Positions 23,961 to 46,300 of a stretch of DNA of 64,000 nucleotides are shown piece by piece. The position numbers were made by a program, and so were the translations under genes. The stretch is from Epiperipatus broadwayi (Eukaryota > Animalia > Onychophora). The first letter of the stretch is position 1. Each line of letters begins with the position of its first letter. Location of the stretch: NCBI GenBank assembly GCA_028023455.1, contig JAQFVV010000007.1, forward strand, positions 7,068,001-7,132,000, written 5' to 3'. Under the pieces are notes generated by a model, which saw nothing but the letters and a program-made list of their open reading frames with translations, searched no databases and had not been told where the DNA came from.

Positions 23961-24329
23961 GATTGTTATATGGTAAATAATGTTATGATTATGGTTATGA
24001 ATATGGAAAGGCACAACAATATTACTGGTCTTATGTAAGAAATCATCTATTAAAAAGATTTGGGAATTTCTGAATTAAAATATTTTATAAATTGCTGCAC
24101 CAATTGATTTATCATGAATTAAAATTAAATTATTCCTTTTTTAAAATTTAAATAAAATAATCTATATGTTTGTTTGAATGCTTATAAAAAGTTTCCACAG
24201 CAGAAGCACTACCATTGAGCCATGATCTTTGGACTTCTAAGTTATAAAGTCTGCTATTCTACTACTACGCTTAATCACTTGGTGCAAATAATTGAGTATA
24301 AATTATTGCTCAGTTGCTCATGAAATATT

Positions 24330-24612: not shown

Positions 24613-24929
24613 AAAAAAGGCTTTAAAAAATAGTAATGAAGAGCATTTCCTAATAATAGACCTGGTTAAATAATTTTACACTGTAATGACACTATTTTAA
24701 AATTATATAGATCCAGGTTATTGTTATATCTGAAGAGTATTACTCAAAAATGAAACAGCATGATTAGATGACATGATGACACCTTGAAACAGTGTGTGAT
24801 TGAGAGAATTCACATCTCCAAAAGTTTTTACATCAGTCTTGGGATTAAAATGGGAAAGATATCTAATAAAAATAATAAAGGAGGACTGAAGATAAACACC
24901 AAAGACTAATGCAAATGTCCAGGGGATAT

Positions 24930-25190
24930 TCTCAGAAGACAAAAATAAGAAGTGCTAACCATGAATTAGAAGAAATTAACAACTAGAAATATTATGGTGA
25001 AATGCTTAATATAGATGAAAACACAATGGAAAAAATTAGCCATGGCATTAAACTTGGATGGAGTACTTTTGACAGAAATAATTTAATATTAAAAGGAAAT
25101 ATATTATGTATGTGAAAAGGAAGATTTTTTAATAGATGCATTTTTGACATATGGGTGTGAGACTTAGACACCTAACAGAAAAGATTGGAT
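24930..25190 (+). mobile_element. Internal RT fragment of the same RTE family
   Basis: gaattagaagaaattaacaac...attaaacttggatggagtacttttgacagaaataatttaatattaaaaggaaatat matches 13620-13690 and 48930-49060. Confidence 0.7.
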
Positions 25191-28100
25191 ATTACAAAAA
25201 AAAAAGTAAAAATGGTTCCTAGATATATGATTAAAAATTCAATGCTTAATTAAACAAATTCAATAACAAAGAAGTAATTCGAGAGTATAATATTAAAACA
25301 AACATATAGTATTCATGGCTAATTCATTTGTATAATAGAAGGGAAGAGGTAAATAAGTGATAGACAGCTTTGTATGAAATGTTTACGCTTTAGTGGAAAA
25401 AAGATTACAAACACACTAAGGGATTTACTCCAAAAAGACATACTACTAATTTGTTCAAAATTAATTTCACGATTCTTTTTATAAAAATGATTAAGAACTA
25501 TAAGTTGAAATGAGAAAGATTACTAGAGATATAGTTGGGTCATATTAAATTCTATCATTTCTTATGTTGTCTTCAAAAAATATTTAATATTTTTTAAGTC
25601 TAGTGTGACAAACAAAATAAAATCAAATACTTATTGTTCTAGAGTCCATAATAAATTTGAACATTAAAAAAGAAAAGGCTGAGACTGTGATCCATGAATA
25701 TAAAACAAACTCCACTTCTCAATCATTACTCTAAACGATGCAGGACATAAAGAACAAAAAAATATAGAAAAAGTATTTCATTATTTTGCATATCCTATTT
25801 ATTATATATACAGAATAATTATTTCAAATATTTCCAAAAAATATCTAAAATCACATATATACAAATTACAAATAATGGTAAAGTAATTCAAATTAATAAT
25901 AAATATGATTTTTCAATGAATATTTTTATCCGTTTATTTTTAGAGCAATATTCAGATAAAAATTATTCATTAAACAACACTTGGAAATTTATGGGGAAAA
26001 TATGAAAGCATTTACCATTTAAATACTCTCTCACCCACACAAAACATTAGTGGAAAAAGTGCTGAGTCACAGCCAGAAACGCATCAATTCTTGATTAAAT
26101 ATTTTGAGAGAAAAAAACCAAAGAGTTTTCTGACATAAAAACTTAAAATAAGTAATATAAATAATTGATATCTGGATATAAATGAACACTTTTAATGAAA
26201 ATATATAATGTATGAAAGACTATCATTTAACAAAATAGGGGGAGGGGGAGACAATATGGTGTATAATTCTATTTCTGTATAAATATATTGAAACAGGGCT
26301 GAGTTCGATCCCTGTTTCAAAAAGTAAACTTTCCTATATATGCGTCAGTATAGCCCAAGTAATTAAGTGAATTTATTTATTTCTTTTTTGTATATAAATT
26401 TATAACTAGATAGGGATTTAAGTTGAAAATAAACAGGAGTAGAGGGAGGTATGTGTGTGCTCTTTGTTTTATGAAAACGCATGTATATAGTGCTGTATGG
26501 AATGAAAATATTAATATTCGTATTTCATGCTAAACCAGCAATCATCAGTTGGTCCAGATTACCATCTCTACACATATGTGCTATAAGTGCTCAGATATAT
26601 ATTAAGATAGCCAAACCTTATAATTTAATGGACAGGTTTCACTCTACTCCACACTCCAACTCTTCAACCATCCATCCAATTGAAAATCTGATGATGGAAT
26701 GCTCAAAGGCCACCCTGAGGCTGAGATTCTTGTCACACCCATGTTGACCTAAGATCAATCTAAACCCTCATGTACAAGACATAATCCATTTAATACACAA
26801 ACAAGGGATGGGCAGACATCTCTACTATGTAATAACTGAATCACACAAGCTTATTATATACCTGTGTCTATATATGTAATATATAGGGTATATAATAAGC
26901 TTGTGTGTTTCAGTTAAATGCATATATAATAAAAGTAAAAAATATGTACTCAGTTTCATCAAATGAAGTTTATATATTTTAGAACAAAAAGAGATGTTTA
27001 TTTTGTTTTTATTTATGTTTATTTTAAAGTCCACAAACAATATACAAATATAAACATATCAAATTTGTATGCTTTGTTACTTATTTATTTTGAATACTTA
27101 CAGCTATTCCAATGTGGGTGCCAATGGACCCATGTATCTATATTCCATTTTATGTTTAGTGACTTTTTAAACACTGCAAGTTGAAATCATGATATAATAA
27201 TGGGATAACTAATCAATAAATTTAAGTTTCTTTTTATATGGAGAAGTAATTTATCATAAAACCACTACGTAATATTGACCCTACAAATTAATTTATTTAT
27301 AAATTGAATGTGTAATTTTAAATGACTTATTACTTGTCATTGACAGGTTTCTTCAAACTTTTAGTATTATTTGCCTTTTCAATTTTATATTTTGTTTTGA
27401 GTGAAAAAGAGGCGATAGTGTGGGGAAAAACAAGGGAAAAACTGGCCAATTGTACATTTTCTTTTGAAAATTGATTTTTTACAAAAAAAATTAAAAGACA
27501 AAAAAAATATTAAAACAATATAAATGAACAAGTCAAGTTTTAGGTTTTAGATTTCTTTATCAATTAAAACATTTTAACAATATAAATAAAGAACATAAAG
27601 TTTATTTTTTTACATTCATTTATAAAAATGCGAAAAAAAAGATTTATTGTCATAATGTTTCATTTTAAACCTTTCTGTTCTATTTTTTTAAAAATTATTT
27701 ACATATCTATATTGTACATATGTGTAAAGTAGGCTGAATGTTAAATTTAGTGATTACTTATCTTGATATTTTCATGAGATTAAGTCATAATGTTTTAAAG
27801 TATCAGTTAAATGGAATGTGGATACCCAAGTCCACAGTCCCCAAATATGTGTCAGGTAAATAAAATCAATGACCCTTTTTTAAATGTTATTATTAAATTG
27901 AATTTTTTTTTTCAAAAATTAATAATTATGGAACAAAATGTATCAAAGAAAATTTTTTAAAATGGTTAATCTCCCCCAATATGATGATTCCTTTTTTTGG
28001 ACCCAATTTGCAAGCCAATAGCAAAACCCCTAACATCATTATTTATGATTAGTATCTCCAAATATTTTATGCTCTGTTTCCATAATATCATTATTAAATG

Positions 28101-28602
28101 GCCCATTAGATGTGAGAGGCATAAATTGAAATAAGTAAATGTCACTCCTTTCTATTTTTTACTTGGTACTCATTTTGTACATAAATTCAAAAAATAAATA
28201 AATAAATAAAAAGATCACGTGATCACCTCTTATACTAGCCCATCCATCCATTGATTGCACAGGGTGGTTCTACTATATGGAAAGTTCTGCCTTGTTAAAT
28301 AAAAAGATACTTGTTTTATTAAACTTTGGAGACATTTTTCTGCTACTTCACTAACAAGTATTCTGATTATTCCCTCCAATATTTCTTTCCCTATTTTCTC
28401 ATAGATTACACTATTAAATTCAAAAAAATCTTTTTATTCCCATGTTCTAGCAGACTATTTCTTTAAATAAAATCAATTTTTGTAAATAAAAATGAAATTT
28501 TATACATTAATATTTTTTCCTTTTAAAATAATAATTAATGAAAATAATTTTAATTTTTTTTATTTATGACCAAAATTAATCCAACTATTAATATATATAT
28601 AT

Positions 28603-28988
28603 CACATGATCATCATTACTTATGCTTGCTCATAACTGCTATTAAAACAGGCAAAACTCTCCATACATTGGAGCCACTCTGTGTAACCTGAGTAATCAAT
28701 GGATTTCAGAAGGCTTGTGCATAAAATCCCTATCTAGTGCCTACTCATCCAATATCCTCAGACTAGGTTCTAGCTTGTTGCTTTCATCAGTAAGAAGTCC
28801 TAAGATCTAAGTGCAGTGCTCTCTGATCCAAAACTTCTCACTGATGAAAGTCACAAGCTACAAACAAGTCTGGAGATATTGGATGAGTAGGCACTAGCCA
28901 GAGATTTTATGCATAAGCCTTCTGGCATCCATTGATTACTCTGGATTGCACTGAGTGGTACTACTGTATGGAGAGTTTGGCCTGTCTT
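28603..28988. mobile_element. Hairpin repeat family (~310-bp imperfect palindrome plus ~45-nt one-sided tail), copy A
   Basis: aaaacaggcaaaactctccatac...gtatggagagtttggcctgtctt. Other copies lie at 33498-33821 and 51197-51554, with relics at ~28235-28300 and ~14870-15030. Confidence 0.85.
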
Positions 28989-29002
28989 ATATATATATAT
29001 AT

Positions 29003-30533
29003 TATAACACCCACCGACATATCTATAATCCTCCATTGTGGACTTTCACCCGAAGCTTCGACGAGAGGTATTTATGAGCATGGTTTGAACCCATCTCATG
29101 CACCAATCTTACCAGTAGGTAGGAATTACCTCCTCGAAAACATATATACAGGTTCTGATATATATCTGATATGGTGATGCACCAAACTAGCTCAATCTCA
29201 AGGTTGGGGACATCTGTCTATCTAGAGAACAAAGCTATAAACTAACCAACACTATCTCATGCGTATATTTATTTTGCGATAGCCTAAAGCTCGAAATCCT
29301 TACTCTAACCCGGGCTGATGGGATTTATTCTACTCGATCATATCCCTTCCCAATAAATCTCATTCGTACCTACATATAAGATTGCTATGCAGACACGCAG
29401 GCCATTCATTATCATACCCACACATATATCACGCTCATTCATCCACACACCAAATAATGCAAATACATATATATATGTGAGCTGTATGATTAATATAGTC
29501 ATATATCTAACTTTAAATATAAAATTTTAATATAGCAATTAACTGAGGTAACACGAGTTCTTTATTGAGATACATATATTGAAAATAGCTGGTGACATGT
29601 CACTTTACCTGTATTCGCGCAATTAAACAAGTCCGTATTGACGTCTTGCCATGAACTTAATCTGGTGGATCTCACGGATGGCAAACAGTTCCAATGGTCA
29701 TTAGGTCCGGCGATAGGTTTCAGAGGTGGAGCAGTTGGCGTACTCTTTCGCAAAGGTCTAAATCTCGAACGATTTTGAATCAACATTTCTTCGATGGAAC
29801 AAAATCTCTTGATTTATTATGACAGTTCGCAAGTCCGGTCAGGTGAGTTCATGACGAGTCCACGGAGTCGAGTAACGACTAGCACACAATCCAATTACCC
29901 CGACATTTTTTGGAAGAAAAAATATTAAACTTCTTAAGAAATAGATTTTTGCGTCCTCCTTGCTAGGATTCAAGCCGCGTCTCTCTTTTTTTTTCTTTTT
30001 TTCCACTCGAGCGCAAGACAAAAAAAAAAGTTCTTTTGTATTCACCTTTAACTCTTCAAAATCTTTCTGCATATTCCTACGCCGCTGACCAGTCCTTCCA
30101 TTGTTCTTCAACACAAAAAAAAACTATACCCACAGACCAGTTTTCCGCCTTCCCGGCGCCAGTTATTACCAAACTGCCTACAGCAATTCACTCATCCTAT
30201 TTCAGTCCTCACATGTTCACAAGGTGACTCAACAAAAGAAAACACGTGTTACCAAAATTATTAATAAACTCAAAAAAAAATATGTGAATAAAATCTATCT
30301 AAGAATAATTAATTGCGCTTTATACAGCTCTACATATATAAGTGATCGCAAACCTCCCAGATACTAACTACGTATTTTTATACTCGCACATACACTATAT
30401 TTACATTACTTGTAACCGGTTCAATGACCGTTTACATATATTCTTTTATTTATTTGTTTATACATGGTCCTTACATTAACACTATTAATTATGTCATATT
30501 TACATATGCGTGAATTCGAACCCGTTTGTTACA
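29003..30533 (-). repeat. 3' LTR (1531 bp)
   Basis: In element orientation it runs TGTAAC...GTTATA, is roughly 99% identical to 33832-35355, and is preceded by the PPT. Confidence 0.93.
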
Positions 30534-30544
30534 TACCCCCCTGG
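30534..30544 (-). other. Polypurine tract
   Basis: The minus strand reads ccaggggggta immediately before the TGTAAC start of the 3' LTR. Confidence 0.8.
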
Positions 30545-30604
30545 TGCGATAGCCTTCAAATACCTTCTTTGTATTTGAACGGCTTCTTAAATGACTCTTC
30601 TCTT

Positions 30605-33157
30605 TCACTTTATTTCTTTCGGGTTTACGAAAGGCTTGAGAGACCGTGCGTTATATGACCCTTTTATCCCCTGGCCAGTGTCCACCCAAAAAGCATGTTT
30701 TCCCAGACCTTTCACTATCGTAAACGGACCCTCATATAAATTACAAAATTTTTTGCAAACAAACTTCCCAGGTTCGCTTAGATGAGGCGTCTTCACCATT
30801 ACCTGGTATCCCACTTTAAAGGAGTGTGATGAACTTTTGAAACTCTCCTTGCGTTGTCTACTCCTGTGAAGCATCAGTTGGTATGCCTGCTGTCTATCCT
30901 TATCTAGATCAATGGGGTTCTCTTCTGAGAAAATCAGTCTGGAGCAACGCAGGTGCGTGTCTACCAAAATGCAAATGTATCGGAGTGAAGCCAGTAGATT
31001 CGTTCACCGCCCAATTCATATAATTTAAAATGTCGGGCAGGTGTTTGACCCACCTTCTATGGTCGGTTTGGATATACGTACAGAACAACCTACCCAATTC
31101 TCGCATCATTCTTTCGCAGGGATTTGACTGAGGGTTACGGATTGAGGTTAACACATGACCGATCTTCAAACGCTCAGTCCATTTCACCCACTCCCTCGAA
31201 ACGAATGGGGTTCCATGATCTGATATGATAGTTTGAGGTTTTCCCATGGATGGAATATGTTCCTTTTCCAGGACGCGTATCGTATTTCTCGTGTTGGCTT
31301 GAGCAAGGGGGTATGCAGACACCAATTTAGAGAACAAATCATAAACGACCAGGAGGTACCTCTTCTTATTAAAGGCCGGTAGTGGGCCATAATAATCGAC
31401 TGCAACAATTTCCTTAGGTCCTCTCGGAATCACGGATAACATCGGAGCTGCATATTTCTTATTTGCGGGCTTAACTCTCTGGCAAATTTCGCACTTCCCA
31501 ATGACCGCCGTGATCTTGCCACGCATGCCCGGCCAGTAAAATCACCTTCGGATCCATCCTTCAGTCTTCATGATCCCATAGTGGCCCGACCTACGGTGCA
31601 GGTGTGCCACCACTGCCGTCCTCATGTGCCACGGGATGACTGCCCTCCATTCAGCTGGAGTTTCCTTCACTCTGTATTGTAGTACACCTCGTTCCAATCT
31701 AAACTTTTGAATAGTCTGCCTGCCCCAAACCCCACTCAGTTTGGCTTCTTTACCCTCCAATTGGTCGATGACCGGCTGAAGTTGGCGGTCTTCTCTCTGC
31801 AAGTATTCCAGACGACGCAGATCGCTTTCTGAGATCTTCATCCGTCCTTAACCCTATGTTTGCTATGTACAAATTCTCAGTATTTAGATGGTATGATTGA
31901 TTGTCCACTGGATTGCGACTCAGAGTATCAGCCACCACATTGTCAGACCCTTTGCAATATCTCACCGTATAGTTGTACTCTTGGAGGTATAGGCTTCACC
32001 GTACTAATCGGCTATTTGTGAGGTAGCTATGGTTGATAAAATCCAGACTCTTGTGGTCAGTAATCACGATGACCTCCGAGCCCAGTAATAACGTTCAAAA
32101 CTTCTGAAAGGCCCAAACAATGGCCAACGCCTCTTTCTCAGTGGTCGTATAATGTACCTCGGAGCCTTTGAGCAGCCTGCTCAAGAAATATAGCATACCC
32201 ATCCTCCCATCTTCCTGCTCTTGAGCCAAGGTTACTCCGAGACTATATCCGCTGCTATCTGTCTGTACTATGAACGGCTTTGAAAAGTCAGGAAAGGCCA
32301 ACATAACATGTCCCAAGAACCCCGTCTTCACTCTTTGGAAAGCTTGGTCCTGCTCCTCCGTCCACTTCCACTCGTTACCTTTTTTAATAGCCTCACCAAG
32401 GGCTCCATCCGTTCCGCAAACTGTTCTTGAAAGCGGTTATAAAATGTACACAGACCCAAGAATGATCGGACCTGCTTCCTGGATCTCGGTTTTGGAAAGT
32501 CACGGATAGCCAAAATCTTGTCCGGGTGTGGTTTAAGTCCCTGGGCTCCCACTATATGCCCAAGAAAGGCCACTTCTTTCTGACACAGCGTGCTCTTTTT
32601 GATATTTATTTTTATGCCCTTTTTCTCACATTCTTCTAAAAATAGTCCCACTTCTCGTATATGTTCCTTGATATCAGTGGAGGCTATCAACACATCATCC
32701 ATGTAAATCGTGACCATGTCCTTTATCTCCGAAGATAGCACCTGGTCCAAGCACCTGAGTAGGCCGGCTCCGCTGTTTATTAAGCCAAAAGGCATCCTGT
32801 TAAATTGATATGAGTGACCCTCATATCTGAACGACGTGTATTGGCGATCTTCCGGATGTAACTTAATTTGCCAATAACTAGCCGTCAAATCGAAAGTCGA
32901 AAATACCTTCTTTCCTTGGAACTTCCGTAATAATTCTTGCATAGGAGGTGGTACGTTACAGTCCCGTACCGTCACTTTATTTAGCTGTCGAGCGTCAAGA
33001 CATAATCTAACGGATCCATCTTTTTTTTTTACTACTACCATCAGGTTACAATACGCTGATGAGCATTTTGATATAATTCCCCACTCTAACATTTGATCTA
33101 TTTGTTCTTTTACCGCTTTTCGGTATTGATGGGAAATGGGGTATGATCTAGCTTTGC
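30605..33157 (-). pseudogene. pol: pol (RT, RNase H, integrase with HHCC, DDE and GPY/F motifs), frameshifted
   Basis: RT: VRLCLDARQLN, FDLTASYWQI, RMPFGL, YMDD. RNase H: TDSSGYSLG, YTTTEKEALAI. Integrase: H..GH.G...T, C..C, VDYYGP, SDHGTPF, NPCER, YEGPF. It is split over several frames. Confidence 0.95.
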
Positions 33158-33821
33158 ATAAATCCCATCAGCCCGGGTTAGAGTAAGGATTTTGAGCTTT
33201 AGGCTATCGCAAAATAAATATACGCATGAGATAGTGTTGGTTAGTTTATAGCTTTGTTCTCTAGATAGACAGATGTCCCCAACCTTGAGATTGAGCTAGT
33301 TTGGTGCATCACCATATCAGATATATATCAGAACCTGTATATATGTTTTCAAGGAGGTAATTCCTACCTACTGGTAAGATTGGCGCGTGAGATGGGTTCA
33401 AACCATGCTCATAAATACCTCTCGTCAAAGCTTCGGGTGAAAGTCCACAATGGAGAATTATAGATTTGTCGGTGGGTGTTATAATATATATATATATAAG
33501 ACAGGCCAAACTCTCCATACAGTAGTACCACTCAGTGCAATCCAGAGTAATCAATGGATGCCAGAAGGCTTATGCATAAAATCTCTGGCTAGTGCCTACT
33601 CATCCAATATCTCCAGACTTGTTTGTAGCTTGTGACTTTCATCAGTGAGAAGTTTTGGATCAGAGAGCACTGCACTTAGATCTTAGGACTTCTTACTGAT
33701 GAAAGCAACAAGCTAGAACCTAGTCTGAGGATATTGGATGAGTAGGCACTAGATAGGGATTTTATGCACAAGCCTTCTGAAATCCATTGATTACTCAGGT
33801 TACACAGAGTGGCTCCAATGT
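33158..33821. repeat. 664-bp inverted duplication of 28665-29328 (host flank + TA + LTR end)
   Basis: 33498-33821 is the exact reverse complement of 28665-28988, and the (AT)7 spacer is the same length. 33158-33483 is the reverse complement of 29003-29328 with 7 substitutions. Confidence 0.95.
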
Positions 33822-33830
33822 TGGGCACCA
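33819..33830 (-). other. Truncated primer-binding site, tRNA-Lys type
   Basis: The minus strand reads TGGTGCCCAACA one nt after the LTR end. This equals the Lys PBS start TGGCGCCCAACG with two CpG transitions. Confidence 0.75.
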
Positions 33831-33831
33831 T

Positions 33832-35355
33832 TATAACACCCACCGACATATCTATAATCCTCCATTGTGGACTTTCACCCAAAGCTTCGACGAGAGGTAT
33901 TTATGAGCATGGTTTGAACCCATCTCACGCACCAATCTTACCAGTAGGTAGGAATTACCTCCTCGAAAACATATATACAGGTTCTGATATATATCTGATA
34001 TGGTGATGCACCAAACTAGCTCAATCTCAAGGTTGGGGACATCTGTCTATCTAGAGAACAAAGCTATAAACTAACCAACACTATCTCATGCGTATATTTA
34101 TTTTGCGATAGCCTAAAGCTCGAAATCCTTACTCTAACCCGGGCTGATGGGATTTATTCTACTCGATCATATCCCTTCCCAATAAATCTCATTTGTACCT
34201 ACATATAAGATTGCTATGCAGACACTCAGGCCATTCATTATCATACCCACACATATATCACGCTCATTCATCCACACACCAAATAATGCAAATACATATA
34301 TATATGTGAGCTTATGATTAATATAGTCATATATCTAACTTTAAATATAAAATTTTAATATAGCAATTAACTGAGGTAACACGAGTTCTTTATTGAGATA
34401 CATATATTGAAAATAGCTGGTGACATGTCACTTACCTGTATTCGCGCAATTAAACAAGTCCGTATTGATGTCTTGCCACGAACTTAATCTGGTGGATCTC
34501 ACGGATGGCAAACAGTTCCAATGGTCATTAGGTCCGGCGATAGGTTTCAGAGGTGGAGCAGTTGCATCTTCAAAGGTCTAAATCTCGAACGATTTTGAAT
34601 CAACATTTCTTCGATGGAACAAAATCTCTTGATTTATTATGACAGTTCGCAAGTCCGGTCAGGTGAGTTCATGATGAGTCCACGGAGTCGAGTAACGACT
34701 AGCACACAATCCAATTACCCCGACATTTTTTTGGAAAAAAAAAATATTAAACTTCTTAAGAAATAGATTTTTGCGTCCTCCTTGCTAGGATTCAAGCCGC
34801 GTCTCTTTTTTTTTCTTTTTTTCCACTCGAGTGCAAGACAAAAAAAAAGTTCTTTTGTATTCACCTTTAACTCTTCAAAATCTTTCTGCATATTTCTACG
34901 CCGCTGACCAGTCCTTCCATTGTTCTTCAACACAAAAAAAAACTATACCCACAGACCAGTTTTCCGCCTTCCCGGCGCCAGTTATTACCAAACTGCCTAC
35001 AGCAATTCACTCATCCTATTTCAGTCCTCACATGTTCACAAGGTGACTCAACAAAAGAAAACACGTGTTACCAAAATTATTAATAAACTCAAAAAAAAAT
35101 ATGTGAATAAAATCTATCTAAGAATAATTAATTGCGCTTTATACAGCTCTACATATATAAGTGATCGCAAACCTCCCAGATACTAACTACGTATTTTTTA
35201 TACTCGCACATACACTATATTTACATTACTTGTAACCGGGTTCGAATGACTGTTTACATATATTCTTTTATTTATTTGTTTATACATGGTCCTTACATTA
35301 ACACTATTAATTATGTCATATTTACATATGCGTGAATTCGAACCCGTTTGTTACA
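33832..35355 (-). repeat. 5' LTR (~1524 bp)
   Basis: Direct repeat of 29003-30533, followed in element orientation by the PBS. Confidence 0.93.
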
Positions 35356-36777
35356 ATATATATATATATATATAATAAAACAAATATATTGATTAGTATG
35401 TGTATCTATTTACATTTATTCCACAGGCACATGTATACTCCCATTCTCCTTATAACAGGTTACCTATGCCTAATCAATATACATATTATATTTTATATTT
35501 TGTGATATTAAGAACTATTATTCAAAACCTAACTAAACACTATAATAGTTATTTTATTTCATTTTTTTATATTATTATTTCCTACCTTAATAAATTATCA
35601 TCTTAATTAAACAAACTGCTGCAATATATATAAATGGTATATTTTGTAGGTTTATCCATGTATGATTTTGATTATAAATATACTGATGTTTCATCTTGAT
35701 CACCCAAGCCATCAACTGGGTGATGAATAGAATATCATAAAGATGGTTATAGAGGTATTGTAAACACTGATTTATAACAATGTTAAAGTTCTACCAATAG
35801 ATAGATAATTTATAATCAAATATACATGTATAAACTCACAAAATATATCACTTATACTTGCAACCTGTGATATCTTATCAATACACACATATATATGTAA
35901 CAATATATAATCAATAACATTCAAATATCTATAATTAAAATGGATTTAAGATCATACAGTCTATACATAAATTAAAACAATAGACAAAATTCATTTTATA
36001 ATTTTGAAATTATGCCAAAAACTTAGCATATATAACAACAGAACTTTCATGGTTTTTGACATCACATAATTCAGTGGGAGGTAGTTACTTCTATTTCAGT
36101 TACATATATAAATTATAGTATGTTTTGCATTTATAATTATTTAATTCTAAGTTCTTGCTAAGGCAGTATTCAATCAAGGTTAACTGATCAAGGCAAAAAG
36201 AAATAAAACTTCCAGGGTTTTTGCAATCAAAATATAGACTCTTTTGATCACCATACTTAATTTAGTATAGAGAAAAAGCATTACAGTTTACACTTATAGG
36301 TATAAGAAATTAAAGTATCATAACACTTTTTGATTTTATTATTTTGTAATAAATTCCTCCACTGGTAAATCAACAGTCAGATTGAGGGTCATACAGGTTC
36401 TTACTCATTTAATGTACTATTCTAGTTTTGTGATCAAATTGTACCGGACATATTTCTTTGACCACCATATACATTTTTAATGAGAGTTTACTATATTTTA
36501 TTATAATTCTGTTAGCTGTCAACCAATGGACCACATGACAATGAATACTATATCATTTATACCACATGATAAATTAACCCTCACTATAATTACTGCTATT
36601 TCCCCTTAGACCAGTATTATCCATAACTGCTAGCTTTTAATTTTTCTTTTTGATATTTAATTGTATAAATCACACACACATATTTATAAGATTTTATAAT
36701 TAGTTTCAAATGCTGGCCATAAAAAGAAGATAGACATTTTAATAAAAATTAACAATTTAATAACAATAATATTACTG

Positions 36778-36902
36778 TCATTTACATTCTTTATTACATT
36801 TACAATGCTTTATATAATTACAACCCACTATTGATGGTTTTACCATCAATAGTGGATTGTGATAATATGAAGCATTGCAAAAGTAATAAAAAATGTAAAT
36901 GA
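36778..36902. repeat. Small palindromic element
   Basis: Core ccactattgatggt-ttt-accatcaatagtgg with imperfect outer arms (tcatttacatt...aatgtaaatga). Confidence 0.7.
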
Positions 36903-39900
36903 TATTAATACTGTATGGATATGACAATGCAATAAGATAAAATTAATAACAATAAAGGTTAAATTACAAACCTATTATTTTTATACTTAAACTATACCTT
37001 AATGAAATAAATACACATTTTGTTTACAGATACAATAATAAAAAAAATAGAAAAATATATGTATACTGTAACGGTCAGAGGCATGTGTTCAGCCAACAAA
37101 ATTTAGAGACCTAACAAAAGTACATCAAACCCAGCATGTTCAGGATATGGTAGTCACAGAACAGTACTAAGCATTAGCCTATTTGGCAGTGTTCCAAAAT
37201 CTCCACTATCTGACCAACACTTCTAGCTCCCATTATTATTAACAATTACATTATAGACAAGGTTTATCTATCCCACACATCACTACTAACAGGCATGATT
37301 AATAAACTTAACTAAAGAAGACAGTGATATCTGGGTTTGAATTCTGTGCTGACTACATTATAGGTATTGACTATATTATTATAGGTATTGGCTGGATAGG
37401 CCAATCTCCATTATCAAGTAATATAAAATATATATATGTTCCTATGTAGACATGGTGTGGCATGTGCAGGAAACTGGAGCATGGGTTATGAATCACTATC
37501 ATCATAGAGTACCCATTTATTGGTTCAAAAACATGGCTATCTCCAATACTGGTAAAATATCTGCCTAGAACCTTGCATAGTATTACTCAACATCTTTTCA
37601 TTTATTGGAAGTATGTAGGCACAGATTATTCTACCAAGTAACATTGATATACTTGCCAAAAGGCACTAACTCATATATGGATAGATATTTAAGCATGTGT
37701 TTAAAATTTAATAAAACAAGCAATGATGTGAAAATCAAGATAACCATATTTTATAGGCTATAAAATGCCCATGAGCTTAAATATAAAGCTTAATTACAAA
37801 TTATTATAGTAAATCACTAATGAGCCAATAAGATACGCCTGCTGAGACAAAATACTTTCCCTCTAGATGAATGCAACATTAAATATAGTGGGATGAACAC
37901 ATACTTTCATAATAAATAACATTGCCTGTTTTACATTAAAAAAAACATGATTATTTCTTTACACTCATAAACAAACATACATGTAGATTATTTCATTTAA
38001 TTGTCACAAAGAATTTCAACCAAATATAAACTAAATAGATGTGGACTTAAATAATTATTTTAGCACTCATTTATTTTTAATTTTGGTAATGAGACATTAG
38101 TTTGATTACATATATAACAGTAGATTGAAAGTTTTAAATCAGATATTTAATTTTCTTTCTTTTTAAACAAACAAATGACTACATTATAACTCAGAAGGAT
38201 TTGGATGAAAGATTTAAGAAATTCAAGCTTGTGCTTGTTATTTTAAAGTTATAAAATGATTATTACTCTCCCCCTAAAGTTTGGAGACAAACCAATTTAT
38301 GCATTAATCGATTTAATAGTAAAACATCATTCCTCCAATGCTTGAGTCAGGCATATAATATAGATAAAATCAATCAATAAAATGTATATTTTTATAACTA
38401 AAAAAAATGATGAGGCATATTTCAAAATAAATAATAAAAAAATTGTATTTATAAAGTTTATAAAATTTTGTACCATTAACAATTAGAAATTAAGTTCTGA
38501 CATAGAATGATTTGTTATAAAAGAGTTACTACACTTATATATAGATTAATGTTTCATTTAATTATGTCTTCCTTTGGCGTCAAGGTTTGATTCCAAAGTA
38601 GTTTTGAGTCAAAGATTTAAATTTAGATAGTATAGATTTTATAGAAGGCACTTTAAATATTTTATCTTTAAAGATTAAAAGTTCATACTTGCATGCGAGG
38701 TTGTTGATGATTACTTTGATGAGGCAGGATGGCACAACTGTCTTCTTACAAATTAAAACTTAAGTTCTGGGCAGGCTCTTGGTGCACTGGATGCAGAAAA
38801 GGACTGGATTTGAAGCTGGTATGTTCTCCCCTTCTTGGTAGCAGCATCATGGAATCAATAAGTTTTTTCACACCAAAGATGCACTCTTTTCCTCTGGAGT
38901 TCTCTGAAAGAAAGGCAACTTGTTTTCTGCTCATAAGCCATGATGATACTTGAAAACCAGCATGACATCTACTTACACTCAGTGGTACATAAGAGAGAGT
39001 AAAAGAGAACTATAACCCAGTGTTTATAAGCCTACAAAGGTAAAAAAAATCTTAGCAAAAACCAAGAAATCATACTTAGCAATCCCTCCAGTTATCCTGT
39101 CTAGAGTTTTTCTTTATTCTTCTTATTTAAAAAAATATTTTAATTAATTCCCCAGACTTACTTTTGCTAGAAAAGAAAATATACTGGTTGACTAATATTT
39201 AACTTGCACCAATCTGCAAAACCTTATCAAGATTAAAATAAGATAAAAAACTTAACTGCCCCCAAAAATAAAAAATAATTTACATCCCAATGGAACTGCA
39301 TTTTTCCAAATTTTTAAAAAAACCTATAAAAATTCTTGCCTTTAGATGAATGTTTGGCTATCAATTAGTAAAATCTGTTAATTGCAAAAAATAAAAAAAT
39401 CAACTTAATTTTTCCATTTCTTTTTTTAGAAAAACATACAAAACCAAAAAAAAAAAAAAAATACATCTCTTTTCTAAATATCTAACTAAAATGTACTTTA
39501 GTGTTAACAATATATATATATATATATATATATAACATCATTCAATCATACACACACCTACATATATATATTATTTTGTTAATGAGGGTAAAGAATTAGC
39601 TATTTGATCTATCATCCTAGGTTCATAATACATTTAAATAAATATGAAGCTCTGTATGTGCATACACACAGACTGCTTCATATCCCTCAAGTTACAAAAA
39701 GAAGAAAAATAATAATAATAAAGATCAGTCCTACTCTGGTAATAATTTTTTTTTTCAGCAGTGACACCAAAAATTTAAATAAACAACTAAACTGCTTCAT
39801 AATTTTAAAAAAAGTTAACATATTCATATTGTTAGTAATTGATTAATAGTTTCCATACAACAAACATACATACACAAAAAAATTTACATATCTATATACT

Positions 39901-39959
39901 TGAAGGGTAATTTCAAAATTCAGGTCCATATTTCATTTCCAAGTCTATACTGATCATTA

Positions 39960-40400
39960 CTTCTTCCTTACCACCCTCTAAGTTTTCCCTGGATCTGGAG
40001 GTACCTGCTGGTAGGGTTTTAGACTCTGCATATTATATGTTCCCCTTATGGTCTTGAGAAATGCATTTTTCCCACAAACATTTGTTATCTTGAAAGGCCC
40101 ACAATAAAGTGGAAAGAACTTATATTGATCCTGCCATGGGTCACTAACACATGGCATGCATACCCACTTCTGGTCATCAACTTGGAAATGGTATGGTTGT
40201 ATGACCCCTATTCTTTGTTTTCCTGCAGTTTTCTTTAGGAGTTCCAAGGCTTCCTTTTGGTCTCCTTTATCAATTTTCTTTCCTCTGTTGATCACAGGGT
40301 TTTAATCATAACTGGAAGTTATGATCAAAATGAAGGTGGAGTGACATAAAGTTAGTGGCCTGATTAACAGTACGGTTGATGGGTTCTATCCAACTTCAGT
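39960..40400 (-). pseudogene. Integrase C-terminal fragment and PPT of a second, related gypsy family
   Basis: KFFPLYCGPFKITNVCGKNAF..IRGTYNMQSLKPY parallels KFCNLYEGPFTIVKGLGKHAF..IKGSYNARSLKPF of the main element. The purine run agagggtggtaaggaagaag follows the stop. Confidence 0.8.
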
Positions 40401-40881
40401 GCTTATTTCCCACATGATTTTCTTCTTCACTGATATACTCTCCAGAAATCTCAATACTAGCTTTAACAATAGCCATTGTCATATCTTTTATACAAGTCAT
40501 CAAGCGTTTATTGCTAGATTCGAGTCCTTTTCTATCCATACACCACACATTACTGTAGGCAAAGGATCACCTCTAAATTGTCACTGATGAGTAACATCTT
40601 TGTGAATATAAACTTTAACATCATTTACATTTTTTATCATGGTTAGGGGTTTAGAAACAAATAGTGCCTTGGCTTTGGTGGATCTAGATGGAAGTGAGAA
40701 CTTCCTCATACCTGCAGCATTTAGAGCAAACACTCTGAACTCATACTCTAAATCTTCATTTAAGCTTGTTACAGTGTAGTATAGAATAGTATCTATTTAA
40801 ATACACAGAGGAGGGATGGACAGAATGCAGGCTTAATGAAGATTTGAAATACAGGTATTCTTATACCTGGAACTTAATTGT

Positions 40882-41033
40882 AAATATAGGGGATTTGCAC
40901 TCAGACTTTCAAAAAACCTTCAATCATCCACATTATCTCATGGTATCTGTGTCTGGTTATGTGTATCACTAGTATGAGATAGTGTGGATGGTTGAAGGTT
41001 GCTTGAAAGTCTGAGTTCAAATCCCCTATATTT
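40882..41033. repeat. Palindromic MITE-like element with B-box-like motifs in both arms
   Basis: aaatataggggatttgcactcagactttcaa...atctcat / atgagat...ttgaaagtctgagttcaaatcccctatattt. Single arms also occur near 3205-3240, 19335-19360 and 62471-62515. Confidence 0.75.
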
Positions 41034-41625
41034 GAAAGTAGAAATTATTATATATTTTTTTTTATAAGTTTGGGTTCTTCATACTAGTTCAGCTGTAGAT
41101 AGAAAGTGAAAAAAAAACAATGCAAAAAACTTATTTTTATAGCCAAAATTTTTTCATTATGTGACAAACTCATGCAGACAAACTTAACAAAAGTTTTACT
41201 TTAGGGTTTTTTGCTTATCTCTTTCGTTTTTAATTAATATAATTTTTAACTTACAAAAGAAATAAATTAATCTTCCTAAAGATCTGTTTATCTGCTAACA
41301 AATGAGATAAATTAACATAAAAATTGCTTAAAAGCAAATCTTTTAACTTTTAGAGCAAAAATGTTACAACTTTACTTTTTTCTTTCTTTTTTCCTCACAA
41401 AGTTCAATAAATCTGTATAATGTTAATACACAGCCATGCAGGGCTTTACAAATATGTTAAATCTATCATTTTAAACAATTAATTAAATATAATTTTTAAA
41501 AAAGTATGATTTAATTTTTTTCTTTTTTTTTTATTAATATCCTTTTATTTTTTTAATGAGGTCATAATTAATGTGTTTAAACCCATGTAGCATAGTGTTC
41601 TGGTATTATATATATATATATAAAT

Positions 41626-41796
41626 ATGCAAAACCATAAAACAATACAGTACTAGATTAAATTCAAAATTTTACCAAAATCCTTACACAACCATGGTTTC
41701 ATCTACTACAAATAGGTAGATGAAACCATGGTTGTGTAAGGATTTTGGTAAAATTTTGAATTTAATCTAGTACTGTATTGTTTTATGGTTTTGCAT
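41626..41796. repeat. Perfect inverted repeat, 81-bp arms, 9-nt loop
   Basis: 41626-41706 is the exact reverse complement of 41716-41796; the loop is tacaaatag. Confidence 0.95.
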
Positions 41797-41832
41797 TTTT
41801 ATTTTTTGCTAGTATAGTGTTAGACAGTTTTG

Positions 41833-41837
<5 letters not shown>

Positions 41838-41905
<68 letters not shown>
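41838..41905. repeat. (TA)n microsatellite; other long runs at ~11358-11428, ~14479-14528 and ~22032-22083
   Basis: Read directly from the sequence. Confidence 0.95.
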
Positions 41906-41914
<9 letters not shown>

Positions 41915-42499
41915 AATTGCCCCAAACTCACAACTCAACTAGATTAGCCAAAAAATAAACTGTAGAGCACACCCAATGATTTCACAGCTACAAGCAGATT
42001 TCTCAAGTCTAAAGAACTACAAAATAACATATTAAAAAAAATATAAATATATATTATTTTGTAGTTCTTTACATTTGGCTAGTTTTGTTGAATAGTTTAA
42101 CTTTATGCTTTAAATGGTTTTGTTTTATTATTTATAAATAATTTAAAAATCACATAAACTTAAGCAGTTGTAAAAGACTAATGTATATATTTAGAAACAC
42201 ACTACGAATATCTTTATTTTCAAAATATTAAACTTAGAATGGCTAAATGAGAAATTAAAATCAATTAAAAAAAATCTGTATATATTTTTTTGCTTACCTG
42301 CTATGACATATTATTTGTGTGAACTTTGTGATTTCATAAAATAACATTTGTATAAATTATTCTGACAAGATTGATCGATCAATTTTAAGAAAACAAAATG
42401 GTTTATTAAAAGTAAGTTTAGTGTGTTAAAAAAAACAAGTAATTTTTTATCAATAAAAATTAATTTAAAAAATAATAAAACCACCACTACTGTAGTGGA

Positions 42500-43323
42500 C
42501 TGAATTTTTTGATAACATCCAAAATTTTGCTGAAAATGTGTTCCCTTTTTTATGAAGTCTTCCCCACATAAATTCTACTAAATATGAGTCAAGGTGCTGA
42601 TGCCCTGTTTCATTTTATTTTTTATTATGCCATTTGACTGAGCCTCAAAGTCTTTCTATACTCTGAGTATGTGCACTGGTTTTTGGATCCACAAAGTTGT
42701 ACATATGGTTTTCACACAAATGTTCTTATTTGGCAGTTCACAGTTCATCACTTTTGTAGAATTTCCAATAGTCTGAATAAATTTTCAACTCCTCTTCCAC
42801 ATTTTGTTTGATCATTTTCATCAGAAGTGCCATTATTCTGTCTGGGTTGTGATGAAACAGTTATCAGTCTCCATGCAGATCCCAGCAAACATTCACTGCC
42901 CTGAAAGTATTTATCTGGCTTAGTTTTTGTGGTTATTATAAAGGCTCTCATCTATCTTGACCATTTCGTTAAGACCTCCAATTTTACATTTTTCTCATGA
43001 TAAGATCATAGAAGCACATAATTCTCTCACATAGTTATTCCAGTCTTTTATGGTGTTATCAGACATACCCAGCCATGCTTTTCCCATTTCAAGCATGATA
43101 ATTCTTGGAACCAGCTATGAATAAAGCATAGCCCCATCACAAATGTTATTGTAGAATCCTTGAACCACATTCCCTTCTGAATGCCTACTTTACAATGATA
43201 ACCTCTAATGTTGAAATGCTATTGTTTATCTGAACTGTGGAGGTAAAAAAAAAAGACAAATCATGCTTGTTTCTGCAGACTTTTTGTGAGGACAGTAAAC
43301 CATACATTTGAAAAAAAGTGCAT
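42500..43323 (-). pseudogene. Merlin (IS1016/IS1595-like, ISXO2 domain) transposase, decayed
   Basis: The minus strand gives TIKDWNNYVRELC, KIGGLNEMVKIDES, FAGICMET..CF, YNFVDPKTSAHTQSIERL*GSVKW and HLDSYLVEFMW, the conserved Merlin/ISXO2 motifs, with stops and frameshifts. Confidence 0.88.
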
Positions 43324-46300
43324 GGCCTTGAACACAGTACAGGATAATTTCTAAATTTTGACCATATTCTAGAATACAGAACACAATAAAAAAATTCACT
43401 TTACAGCGATGTTAGCTTTAACATTTAAAGTAAGTTTACAGCAGTGTTAACTTTAACATGTACAGTAAGTGATGTATATACCTTATTTATCAATTAGTAA
43501 TACCAGCATAATTTCATGACATCACAGTATACTTTAAATTGCACGATACTTCAAGGCAGGTCTACTGCATAAGTACTGAAAATTTAAATATTGTCCTGTA
43601 ATTTTGAAAAACAAAGAATAGCTATTATATTTTTTGTAATTTTATTTTTGTCTAATTAAAGCATTGGTCATAAAACATTTTTTTTGAGGATTAGGATTAA
43701 ATTGAACCAATCTTGGTTAAGTTGAGAAGTAGAATGTTGAATCTTGGAGCTTCAAGTCTGTGAATTAAGTTACTAACTCTGCTACTTTGAATCTCAAATT
43801 ATAAACTCTTAGGCTGTAAACCATTTGAGTATTAATTTTAAATAAAATCAGCCCATTTGGAAAAAGAACAATAGGTTTAGAATTGGTAAAAACAGTGTAA
43901 ATAATGGAGAAAAAAATTAGAATATTTGGATTGCCTTAATGTTTAAATCAAAATATTGTGTTTGTATTTTTGGTTGTTCTGATAAAAAAAAAAACAAATT
44001 ATGAAGATATGTTTAATGCCATATTCAAAAGAATTAGTCTCCAATCAAAATTAATATTTTATCTTAACTGTTTGATAATGCAGTTTTTGAATGACAAAAT
44101 AAAGAACATTTAAACTATAATAATATCAGTAAATTCAAGAATGACTATGGGATGTGGGCATATATTATTGATGGTTTAGATTTTTGGCTAAGTATGAAAG
44201 CATTAGTGAAAGTTTCTAAGAAATAACTATTGCTTTAGAACAAAAAATGTCAGATAGGACTGGTTTCTATCCACTTTTTAACTATTTGTGAAATGATCCC
44301 AGACATCCAAAATATTTCCATGTTATCTTGATTATTATAGCATATTCTTCATCTCAATCCTATCACATTGCCATCATTCATTAGCTCAAAATCTCAGATG
44401 ACTACCTCTTTCATTATAAATATCTTTTGTGAACTATCTTTGCTTGTCTGATCAGCTGGAGTTTTAAATACTTGAATTTCTATACCCATGTTAACAGGTT
44501 GATGTTTAGCCACTATATTACTCTTTCACAGGTAGGGATATCTATCCACTTTTAATATTTTAAGAAAGACTGAATAATCAATAAACCACAGACATAACAA
44601 ATAAAATTACACCAGATTCAAAATTAAACAAGATTTTCCAAAGAAAATAAACTCTATAACACAATTTCCAATTTCATTCCTTACACCCTTAATATTAAAA
44701 GAACTCATAAACAAGGTAATTGCTTCAGAATCATAAATTCTAAATAATGATTCTTAATTCTTTTTTTATTTCATTTCTTTCAAGAAGACAACCTTAGCCT
44801 CATTAAAACTGTGACATGAATCTCTTTAATGGATACATAATGCAGAACTAGGGTATTTACTTTTAACCCTACTTTTATGTGCTTTTGTTCTTTTATTTAA
44901 GTTCAAACTACTCTAACCTATATATAACTTCTTGCAAAAACAAGAAATAATATATAGTATTTCAGGAATAGTCTTCCCATAAAAAATCTTTGTGTTATTT
45001 AATAAATTATTCAAAATAAAATAAAACCTATCTTCCAAGTAATTATCTTATTTTCAAACAATGTAATATTCTTATTTACAATTCTATAAAAAGCAAATTT
45101 AAAAGGCAAAGAAATAAAATTATATTTTTCTTTATCTTTCACATTATTGCAATTATTAACAGAACCATAATTACTATTAAATAAAATATCCTTAATATAT
45201 TAATCAGAATAGCCAGTACTCGAAAAATCTTTATAAAATTGACATTTTTCAAACAAAGCAATCGTATTGGAACTATTTTCCCTTGATTTCTGTAGCAATA
45301 ATTTTTTAAAGTAGCAATTTTAAGAGAGACACATTGATAGCTACCAATTTTTGATTCAACTTTTAGCTTATTATAAAAAGACTTGTTATTGCTACTCTCA
45401 CAACAAAAGCACACTGTGGAAGTTGTCATTCTGCAATACTCAAATATATTTAAAATCATGTCTACATCAATAAATCTATAACTATATTCATTCAAGTTTT
45501 TGATACAAACAGGATGCAAATAGCAGTAAGACCAAAAAAATGAGTTAAATCCATAACACAGCTGCACCACAAACAGTAGTTTATAATACACCAATTATAG
45601 TAATTGTGTAGTTAATAAACATTGAGACCCCTCCCCCAGTTTTTAACTAATATTTTTCTTGAAATAATCTCACAACTAGTGTGGAAACTGTAAAGGAATA
45701 AATCCATTAAAGTCATGGAGGAGTGATTAAAACAAATGATGCTGCCTCCTTTAGATTTTTTTTCAAATTAAAAAAATAATATATTAAAATGATTTGAGTT
45801 TGCTATTTTTAAAAAAAAATTAGCAAAATACCTAATAAACGGCTGTGTGACATAATTTAAAAGAACTTGATTGGATTTCTCTGACTAAAGGCTATCTTGT
45901 CATTTTAGTGAAGAGTTAAAATTTGAAAAAGAGGAGGGAATAAAAAATGAATTTCATTATAATAAACTAAGTAAAACTGTTATGTTCAATCTCCTACATG
46001 TTATCTCAACTATTACATTATAATGAAGCATATAATAATTAAATTATAAAATTTCAAAAACATGTACTGATAATTTCTTACATTAATACTAAAACAAATA
46101 CCATGGTATCAATGTTACATATAAAATAAAAATGTAGTTTTCCATAATTTTTTTTGCTAAAATTGTTTGTAAACTGTAAAAGAAAATTATTGTCATTGGG
46201 AAAATATACATATGCAAATTTTCAAATAGATCAGAAATTGGGAAGTAGATAAAAACTGATTTTCAAGATTTTATTTTCCCAGACTTAAAAAACAGTATCA

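What the first reader, a model, noticed from the sequence alone, without database searches (positions are those of the whole stretch)
33158..34157. ~1-kb nested hairpin downstream of the 5' LTR promoter: candidate natural 'killer' (siRNA) locus
Seen: 33158-33483 and 33832-34157 are inverted copies of the same 326 bp of LTR end, about 98% matched, and the 348-nt loop is itself mostly an imperfect hairpin. Known: the distal LTR end (U5) is included in transcripts started in the 5' LTR, and rearranged transposon copies that make hairpin RNA can silence their family in trans (maize Mu killer). Inferred: this dead element could produce dsRNA against the LTR of every family member and against the hairpin repeat family, with read-through into pol.
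Basis: inference. Interest (0 to 1): 0.75.

Follow-up and report, generated by a model that had tools for sequence, protein, structure and literature searches.

The report
Dead retrotransposon with built-in 1-kb hairpin
A broken jumping gene in the velvet worm genome had its front genes replaced by a backwards copy of its own tail end plus neighbouring DNA, so any transcript from it would fold into a long double-stranded hairpin; whether that hairpin silences the family is untested, and one indirect check argues against it.

Summary
33158-33483 and 33832-34157 are inverted copies of the last 326 nt of an LTR, 98% matched. The loop is a 340-bp palindromic MITE.

The element is a minus-strand Ty3/gypsy copy: 5' LTR 33832-35355, truncated tRNA-Lys-type PBS, RT-RNaseH-integrase 33157-30600 with broken frames, 3' LTR 29003-30533. 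Full-length relatives carry 1.62 kb of gag-protease between the PBS and RT. Here that stretch is replaced by 33158-33821, an inverted copy of 28665-29328 (3' LTR end, TA tract and the flanking MITE).

Because flank DNA was copied, the event happened in place at the DNA level. Both junctions lie in short imperfect homology and are unique in the 5.6-Gb Epiperipatus broadwayi assembly.

The "killer" reading is anatomically possible. The hairpin sits in the leader behind an intact 5' LTR, and the genome encodes Dicer-, RdRP- and DNMT-like sequences. No expression or small-RNA evidence exists.

Indirect evidence argues against family-wide silencing. 21 of 23 sampled relatives have younger LTR pairs than this element, most far younger than the arm divergence.

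This is most likely a neutral, single-copy rearrangement product. The scan's first stage noted the same stretch separately (s1-086902).

The parts
28649..28988 (.). Flanking palindromic MITE-like repeat ('X'), full-length source copy just outside the 3' LTR
   Evidence: Own arms 28687-28798 / 28833-28944 at 87%. Full-length matches of 83-87% at many other loci, 7881 first-look candidates. Termini read.
28989..29002 (.). (TA)n tract between the MITE and the LTR: target site of the insertion (4-bp TSD ATAT, not resolvable inside the repeat)
   Evidence: Sequence. Most relatives are also flanked by (TA)n. A clean 4-bp TSD, ATAC, is seen in L001.
29003..30533 (-). 3' LTR (1531 nt; sense termini TGTAACA...TGTTATA). 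Its last 326 nt (29003-29328) are the template of the inverted arm.
   Evidence: Direct repeat with 33832-35355. 18 substitutions in 1519 aligned nt. Termini.
30534..30548 (-). Polypurine tract region (sense ...CCAGGGGGGTA) abutting the 3' LTR
   Evidence: Sequence.
30600..33157 (-). pol remnant: RT, RNase H, integrase, split into at least 5 ORF pieces by stops and frameshifts; gag and protease absent
   Evidence: ORFs. Pfam RVT_1 2.6e-29, RT_RNaseH_2 3.1e-23, rve 9e-14. Collinear with full-length relatives up to window 33156-33159.
33158..33483 (+). Inverted arm M: last 326 nt of the LTR in the opposite orientation to the element. Private states at 33193, 33351, 33427, 33456, 33466; 33384 keeps the family state that both LTRs lost.
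33484..33821 (+). Inverted copy of the TA tract plus the flanking MITE (lacking its outer 16 nt); forms the inner imperfect hairpin. 0 differences in 338 nt from 28665-29002.
   Evidence: 100% over query 17-340.
33820..33830 (-). Truncated primer-binding site (sense TGGTGCCCAAC). Relatives read TGGCGCCCAACGTGGGGC, tRNA-Lys type. Junction A with the MITE copy lies at 33819-33822.
33832..35355 (-). 5' LTR (1524 nt). Its last 326 nt (33832-34157) are arm R of the hairpin. Sense-strand AATAAA at 34158 and 34102; TATA-like motifs at 34304/34302, 33993, 33977.
33130..33161 (.). Junction B: pol coding sequence joined to the LTR fragment at 33157/33158. GAAT microhomology with one odd base (C at 33157), inside about 20/27 nt of chance similarity between pol and LTR.
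   Evidence: alignment to L006 and L007 pol and to both LTRs; junction unique in the genome.

Best explanation
A Ty3/gypsy-type LTR retrotransposon inserted, in minus orientation, into a (TA)n tract next to an old palindromic MITE. Later a single DNA-level event in place removed 1.62 kb of gag-protease (from base ~11 of the PBS to the start of RT). It filled the gap with a 664-bp inverted copy of the element's own 3' junction: the last 326 nt of the 3' LTR, the TA tract and 324 nt of the flanking MITE, templated from 3.8 kb away. The most likely mechanism (inferred) is replication template switching or microhomology-mediated repair, because both junctions lie in short imperfect homology. The product is a dead, single-copy element whose leader would fold into a ~1-kb hairpin if the 5' LTR fires: 326-bp outer stem at 98%, 112-bp inner stem at 87%. 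Shown: the structure, its origin from the 3' junction, its uniqueness, and the deletion. Inferred: the mechanism. Not shown: transcription, dicing, or any effect on the family. My reading is that it is a neutral rearrangement by-product in a 71%-repeat genome. It could feed dsRNA into RNAi, but it has not shut the family down.
For: The 664-nt inverted match 28665-29328 / 33158-33821 is 99% identical and spans the LTR/flank junction with the same TA count. The MITE part has 0/338 differences, while other MITE copies are at most 87% identical, so it is a copy of the neighbouring MITE and not an independent insertion. The source copy is complete at both ends (full MITE, full LTR); the internal copy is truncated at both ends. 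Three full-length relatives have 1.62 kb between the PBS and the window-33156 equivalent, encoding gag and protease. Both 80-nt junction probes match only this locus in 5.6 Gb, and only this locus matches the whole 1.3-kb hairpin query. Arm M shares 3 of the 4 lineage-specific states of this element's LTRs, so it derives from this element. The family continued to insert: 21 of 23 sampled elements have lower LTR-LTR divergence than this one (1.25%), and 17 are at or below 0.52%. In the same 326 nt their LTR pairs differ by 0-4 sites, against 7 between the hairpin arms.
Against: There are no read-level data, so the assembly (Flye, 26x ONT, Illumina-polished; PMC9985152) cannot be verified here. 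Arm M differs more from its template (7/326) than the two LTRs differ from each other (2/326), which simple copying after insertion does not predict. Possible causes are error-prone repair synthesis, CpG decay (6 of 8 variable sites are CpG transitions), LTR-LTR gene conversion, or consensus errors. The sample of relatives is biased towards copies most similar to the query. A hairpin allele that is rare in the population could be functional without stopping the family.
Confidence: 0.72

Rival explanations
1. Functional hairpin-RNA ('killer', hpRNA-type) locus. The 5' LTR promoter drives a transcript whose leader folds into long dsRNA. Dicer makes siRNAs against the U5/leader of every family member and against the MITE family, possibly amplified by the genome's RdRP and reinforced by DNA methylation.
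For: The hairpin lies in the transcribed position behind a complete 5' LTR that is 97-98% identical to young relatives. Conserved AATAAA motifs at 327 and 271 nt from the LTR end, and none closer, suggest the arm is R-end plus U5. The predicted fold is very stable. Targets exist: at least 40 RT-bearing copies at 94-99% identity and many LTRs at 95-98% to the arms. The genome has a Dicer_dimer exon, a eukaryotic RdRP (308 bits) and a C5-DNMT exon. Precedents are Mu killer (PMC3440606), Ac/Ds inverted duplications (bioRxiv 10.1101/2020.01.07.897926) and Drosophila hpRNA loci (PMC10317233).
Against: No transcript or small-RNA data exist. The family kept inserting after this element arrived, with most sampled LTR pairs far younger than the arm divergence. 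It is one locus with no sign of conservation or selection, and pol is decaying neutrally. The flanking genome has CpG o/e of 0.08-0.14, so young TEs are probably methylated and transcriptionally silent anyway. The U5 arm would target only the 5' leader of family mRNAs.
Confidence: 0.13
2. Assembly artefact: a chimeric or fold-back nanopore read, or a mis-join of repeats, created an inverted duplication that does not exist in the animal.
For: The assembly is Flye on 26x ONT reads in a 71%-repeat genome (PMC9985152). LTR and MITE repeats are hard to assemble, and several arm differences are at CpG sites, where nanopore consensus errors are frequent (my own knowledge).
Against: The structure is not a simple read-end palindrome. 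It combines a 1.62-kb deletion with a 664-bp templated insertion. It has two precise junctions in microhomology, a retained partial PBS, and private differences in one arm only. A repeat-collapse error would not copy unique-junction DNA (LTR end plus TA tract plus MITE) in inverted orientation.
Confidence: 0.06
3. Origin during reverse transcription or integration: self-priming at the MITE hairpin on a read-through RNA, or autointegration. In this case the hairpin was present when the copy inserted.
For: The stretch I fetched there holds a 2.8-kb self-complementary region, but it is unrelated to this family.
Against: The inverted segment contains the DNA that flanks this very insertion: same MITE copy at 100% identity, same TA count. 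A cDNA made elsewhere could not carry that. The structure is asymmetric about the MITE centre, with the PBS on one side and the TA tract on the other. The junctions are unique in the genome.
Confidence: 0.04

Closest known systems
Mu killer (Muk) of maize
   Same: A rearranged, non-autonomous derivative of a transposon carries an inverted duplication that includes the element's terminal, promoter-proximal repeat. If transcribed it gives a long hairpin RNA homologous to all family members (PMC3440606).
   Different: Muk derives from a DNA transposon and duplicates about 2 kb, including coding sequence. It is transcribed by read-through from a flanking gene and acts through plant RdDM, and its small RNAs and heritable silencing are shown genetically. 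Here the element is an LTR retrotransposon in an animal. The arms are 326 nt of non-coding LTR end plus an unrelated MITE, the presumed promoter is the element's own LTR, and nothing functional is shown.
Drosophila hpRNA loci (e.g. Nmy/Tmy in D. simulans, hpRNA1, esi-2)
   Same: Young inverted duplications of the sequence they target, producing Dicer-2-dependent endo-siRNAs in an animal of the panarthropod lineage (PMC10317233).
   Different: Those loci are expressed, yield mapped siRNAs, and have genetic phenotypes, and several are conserved or recurrently born. This locus has none of that evidence. It targets a transposon leader rather than a gene.
Inverted duplications from alternative transposition of Ac/Ds that start siRNA silencing
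   Same: A structural accident of the element itself makes an inverted repeat that could initiate silencing (bioRxiv 10.1101/2020.01.07.897926).
   Different: The mechanism there is transposase-mediated. Here the junction microhomology points to replication or repair template switching.
Templated inverted insertions from replication template switching (FoSTeS/MMBIR-type rearrangements)
   Same: A deletion is filled by a nearby sequence copied in inverted orientation, with microhomology at both junctions and extra point changes in the copied tract (established knowledge; features seen).
   Different: The process was not observed, and the excess of changes in the copied LTR arm is not statistically secure.
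Ty3/gypsy (Metaviridae) LTR retrotransposons using a tRNA-Lys primer, as Drosophila gypsy does
   Same: LTR-PBS-gag-PR-RT-RH-INT-PPT-LTR in full-length relatives, an 18-nt PBS of tRNA-Lys type, and a 4-bp TSD.
   Different: This copy lacks gag-PR and half of the PBS. The family shows a strong (TA)n target preference and LTR termini TG...TA.

Membership tests
Ty3/gypsy LTR retrotransposon | Two long terminal direct repeats | tested here: met
   29003-30533 and 33832-35355; 18 substitutions in 1519 aligned nt.
Ty3/gypsy LTR retrotransposon | Domain order RT - RNase H - integrase | tested here: met
   Pfam RVT_1, RT_RNaseH(_2) and rve in that order on the minus strand. A full-length relative has gag-RVP-RVT_1-RNaseH-Integrase_H2C2-rve.
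Ty3/gypsy LTR retrotransposon | PBS next to the 5' LTR and PPT next to the 3' LTR | tested here: met
   The PBS is truncated to about 11 nt here and is 18 nt of tRNA-Lys type in relatives. A G6 polypurine run abuts the 3' LTR.
Ty3/gypsy LTR retrotransposon | gag and protease present (autonomous copy) | tested here: not met
   The 1.62 kb present in relatives is missing, and the pol frames are broken. This is a dead derivative, not an autonomous member.
Ty3/gypsy LTR retrotransposon | Target-site duplication | tested here: inconclusive
   Both flanks are (TA)n, compatible with ATAT but not resolvable. A clean ATAC duplication is seen in relative L001.
Mu killer / hpRNA-type silencing locus | Inverted duplication of sequence from the target family | tested here: met
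   326-nt arms at 98%, matching family LTR ends at 95-98%.
Mu killer / hpRNA-type silencing locus | One transcript spans both arms | not testable with these tools
   Position only: the arms lie in and just downstream of the 5' LTR, and motif layout suggests a long U5. An RNA-seq run exists (SRX10007847, named in PMC9985152) but cannot be mapped here.
Mu killer / hpRNA-type silencing locus | Locus-specific small RNAs of Dicer size | not testable with these tools
   No small-RNA data. Dicer-, RdRP- and DNMT-like sequences are encoded in the genome.
Mu killer / hpRNA-type silencing locus | Trans-silencing of the family | tested here: inconclusive
   Indirect test only: 21 of 23 sampled relatives have younger LTR pairs than this element, and 17 are at or below 0.52% against 1.25%. 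That argues against a fixed, effective silencer, but dating of the hairpin itself is imprecise.
MITE (the loop repeat X) | Short, non-coding, terminal inverted repeats, high copy number | tested here: met
   About 340 bp, nearly fully palindromic (87%), thousands of candidates and full-length copies at 83-87%. Superfamily and TSD were not determined.

The most novel reading that the evidence does not exclude
This is a naturally born hairpin-RNA locus in an onychophoran. A retrotransposon's own LTR promoter transcribes an inverted copy of its U5, giving Dicer-derived siRNAs (possibly RdRP-amplified) that damp a still-active Ty3/gypsy family and its abundant non-autonomous derivative. It would be an animal LTR-element counterpart of maize Mu killer, caught soon after birth.
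Probability: 0.1. Interest if true: 0.6.

Novelty: new member of a known kind. Interest (0 to 1): 0.3.

Why it matters
If the locus made siRNAs, it would be a rare animal example of how silencing of a young retrotransposon family can begin from an accident of the element itself. It would also come from a phylum with no small-RNA biology on record. As it stands, it is a well-resolved example of a templated inverted insertion with microhomology inside a transposon. Its private SNPs and two unique junctions make it an unambiguous probe for small-RNA or RNA-seq mapping in Epiperipatus broadwayi. In a 5.6-Gb genome that is 71% repeats, such structures are expected to arise by accident, so the structure alone is not remarkable.

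Tried and rejected
1. MITE as part of the LTR. A 92%-identical element in L001 also has a MITE copy after its 3' LTR. That element inserted inside another MITE copy with a clean ATAC duplication and a different junction. Most relatives have only (TA)n flanks, so I rejected this idea.

2. Two independent head-to-head insertions flanking the MITE. Rejected because the LTR/TA/MITE junction is identical in both places, with the same TA count and 0/338 differences.

3. Fold-back priming at the MITE palindrome. Rejected because the structure is asymmetric: PBS on one side, TA tract on the other.

4. Extension of the LTR match to 33130 seen in BLAST rows. This is pol coding sequence (sense ...KARSYPISHQYRKAV...) present in intact relatives. 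It has about 20/27 chance similarity to the LTR and is not extra LTR.

5. The stretch fetched at its stated offset (L008) holds a 2.8-kb self-complementary region but shares nothing with this family, so it gave no information on the TSS.

6. Link between the abundant short derivative and the CEP83-capturing element of note s1-085428. The lookup by sequence was blank and Pfam gave only a weak gag hit; left open.

7. TSS and poly(A) mapping by motifs is only suggestive.

8. The costly protein searches and structure tools were not used, because Pfam settled the proteins.

Method note: majority column states of aligned non-coding LTRs were used inside scripts only to polarise differences. No copy is singled out as intact.

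Full report
**Observation**

The repeat finder reports inverted arms 33158-33485 / 33830-34157, 328 nt, 98% complementary and 344 nt apart. It also reports an inner inverted pair 33542-33653 / 33688-33799, 112 nt, 87%, with a 34-nt loop. The two extra matching bases are coincidental. The minus strand of 33130-34185 folds as RNA into one almost continuous hairpin, MFE -831.8 kcal/mol.

**What the element is**

- The window is AT-rich (about 26% GC), with a GC-richer island at 28-36 kb.
- Direct repeats 29003-30533 and 33832-35355 are LTRs of 1531 and 1524 nt. They differ by 18 substitutions in 1519 aligned nt.
- Between them, on the minus strand, lie RT (RVT_1, 2.6e-29), RNase H (3.1e-23) and integrase core (9e-14), in Ty3/gypsy order. 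They are cut into several ORF pieces.
- A G6 polypurine run abuts the 3' LTR.
- The sense LTR starts TGTAACA and ends TGTTATA.
- In relatives it is followed by one base and an 18-nt PBS, TGGCGCCCAACGTGGGGC, of tRNA-Lys type. The tRNA assignment rests on my own knowledge of the Drosophila gypsy and retroviral Lys PBS.
- In the window only TGGTGCCCAAC remains.
- A 4-bp target duplication is clean in relative L001 (ATAC). Here it is hidden in a TA tract.

**What was lost and what replaced it**

At least 40 loci in the same genome carry the RT segment at 94-99% identity. In three full-length relatives, collinearity with the window runs from the 3' LTR through pol and stops at window 33156-33159. 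A further 1.62 kb then separates that point from the PBS. In one of these relatives a single long frame gives gag, aspartyl protease, RT, RNase H and integrase hits.

In the window those 1.62 kb are absent. In their place is 33158-33821, which is 99% complementary over 664 nt to 28665-29328. That source comprises three parts:

- the last 326 nt of the 3' LTR;
- the 14-nt TA tract;
- 324 nt of the neighbouring ~340-bp palindromic repeat X.

X is a MITE-like family. It has thousands of first-look candidates, full-length copies elsewhere at only 83-87% identity, and a third copy in the window near 51194-51520. The internal copy of the TA tract plus X has 0 differences in 338 nt from the flank copy and the same number of TA units. 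So the inverted segment is a copy of this insertion's own 3' junction, including non-element DNA. The event therefore took place at this locus, at the DNA level, after integration. The flank copy is complete (whole X, whole LTR) and the internal copy is truncated at both ends, so the flank is the template.

**Junctions**

- Junction B, between pol and the LTR fragment, lies at 33157/33158. Both partners read GAAT there, and the window has one odd base (C at 33157). The 27 nt of pol next to it resemble the LTR at about 20 positions by chance.
- Junction A, between the PBS and X, lies at 33819-33822. It has a 2-nt exact overlap (AC) within 7 of 10 matching positions.
- 80-nt probes across each junction match only this locus in the 5.6-Gb assembly. 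Only this locus matches the whole hairpin query.

A deletion filled by a nearby segment copied in inverted orientation, with microhomology at both joints, is the signature of replication template switching or microhomology-mediated repair. That rests on established knowledge; the mechanism itself is inferred.

**Differences between the three copies of the 326 nt**

- The two LTRs differ at 2 sites. Arm M differs from each at 7.
- M shares three of the four states that set this element's LTRs apart from 46 other LTR ends, so it comes from this element.
- M has five private changes (33193, 33351, 33427, 33456, 33466).
- At 33384 M keeps the family state that both LTRs have lost.
- Six of the eight variable sites are CpG transitions. 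X has no CpG at all, which explains why the X part shows no change.
- Flanking DNA has CpG o/e of 0.08-0.14, against 0.98 in the LTR. This points to heavy germline CpG methylation, so CpG decay is general and not specific to the hairpin.
- The excess of changes in M over L and R is not statistically secure.
- Some differences could be consensus errors of a 26x nanopore assembly (PMC9985152).

**Organism**

The assembly totals given by the tool are 5,601,407,764 bases in 18,588 sequences. Table 1 of the Epiperipatus broadwayi genome paper gives 5,601,407,943 bp in 18,588 scaffolds (PMC9985152). The genome is 70.9% repeats according to that paper.

**Could it work as a "killer"?**

Points in favour:

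- On the element's sense strand the order is 5' LTR (arm R is its last 326 nt), partial PBS, inverted X, arm M, pol. Any LTR-started transcript that reaches pol carries at least part of both arms.
- In 48 LTRs of the family the only canonical poly(A) signals in the last 500 nt lie at 327 and 271 nt from the end. TATA-like motifs lie at 471-473 nt and at 146-162 nt from the end.
- If one of the AATAAA motifs is the signal, U5 is about 250-300 nt and nearly the whole arm is transcribed. If the proximal TATA is used, about 120 nt is transcribed. Either way the stem is long enough for Dicer. This is motif-level inference.
- The genome encodes a Dicer dimerisation-domain exon, a eukaryotic RdRP (three exons, best 308 bits) and a C5 DNA methyltransferase exon.
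- Precedents exist in maize (Mu killer, PMC3440606; Ac/Ds, bioRxiv 10.1101/2020.01.07.897926) and in Drosophila hpRNA loci (PMC10317233). RdRP-bearing arthropods use siRNAs against transposons (PMC6004056; bioRxiv 10.1101/185694).

Points against:

- There is no expression or small-RNA evidence.
- I measured LTR-LTR divergence in 23 other elements of the family. 21 are below this element's 1.25%, and 17 are at or below 0.52%, down to 0.13%.
- In the same 326 nt, their LTR pairs differ by 0-4 sites (median 1), while the hairpin arms differ by 7.
- Unless the hairpin is much younger than its arm divergence suggests, most sampled insertions postdate it. It therefore did not stop the family.
- Caveats: the sample favours copies close to the query, the numbers are small, and the allele may not be fixed.

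**Verdict**

The structure is real, precisely explained, and unique. It is best read as a neutral in-place rearrangement of a dead Ty3/gypsy copy. The siRNA-source reading remains possible (about 0.1-0.15) and is cleanly testable thanks to the private sites and junctions. The first stage of the scan recorded the same stretch independently as [quoted passage not shown] (s1-086902), and my analysis confirms that.

Noticed in passing
L002:4128-8704, L003, L009-L013, L015-L017, L019, L021-L024 (own genome): The commonest form of this family among sampled loci is a ~4.6-kb non-autonomous derivative with LTR starts 3.03-3.05 kb apart. Its internal part keeps about 430 nt after the PBS and the last 78 nt before the 3' LTR, and has about 1 kb that does not match the full-length element. 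One 242-aa ORF gives only a weak gag hit. Their LTR pairs are very young (0.13-0.3%).
   Followed up: partly
L004:2947-7893: Another deletion derivative: the PBS is joined directly to pol at the equivalent of window 32396, so gag, protease and RT are lost. The family produces many different internal deletions.
   Followed up: no
window 28989-29002 and 35356-35375; flanks of L002-L007: Nearly every copy is flanked on both sides by (TA)n, and the one clean TSD is ATAC. The integrase seems to prefer TA-repeat targets.
   Followed up: partly
window 20000-28600 and 35400-45000: CpG observed/expected is only 0.08-0.14 in non-element DNA, against 0.98 in the young LTR. More than half of the LTR-LTR differences are CpG transitions. 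This is a vertebrate-like signature of heavy germline CpG methylation in an onychophoran.
   Followed up: partly
G000:C6239:4764872-4805306 (minus strand): A eukaryotic RNA-dependent RNA polymerase gene (Pfam RdRP, three exon matches, best 308 bits, no internal stops). It is relevant to siRNA amplification in Onychophora.
   Followed up: no
window 41620-41802: A near-perfect small hairpin: 87-nt arms, 99% complementary, 9 nt apart. It could be a young MITE or a hairpin-RNA-like locus.
   Followed up: no
window 21461-21992 and 36770-36910: Two further palindromic repeats (250-nt arms at 89%; 69-nt arms at 87%), probably other MITE families.
   Followed up: no
window 3160-3243, 19280-19363, 40948-41031: An 84-nt repeat with a tRNA B-box-like motif (GAGTTCAAATCC), probably a tRNA-derived SINE.
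   Followed up: no
window 56001-58000: Strong GC-skew outlier (-0.60) in the composition profile; probably a C-rich simple repeat. Not examined.
   Followed up: no
It is unrelated in sequence to the family studied here.
   Followed up: partly
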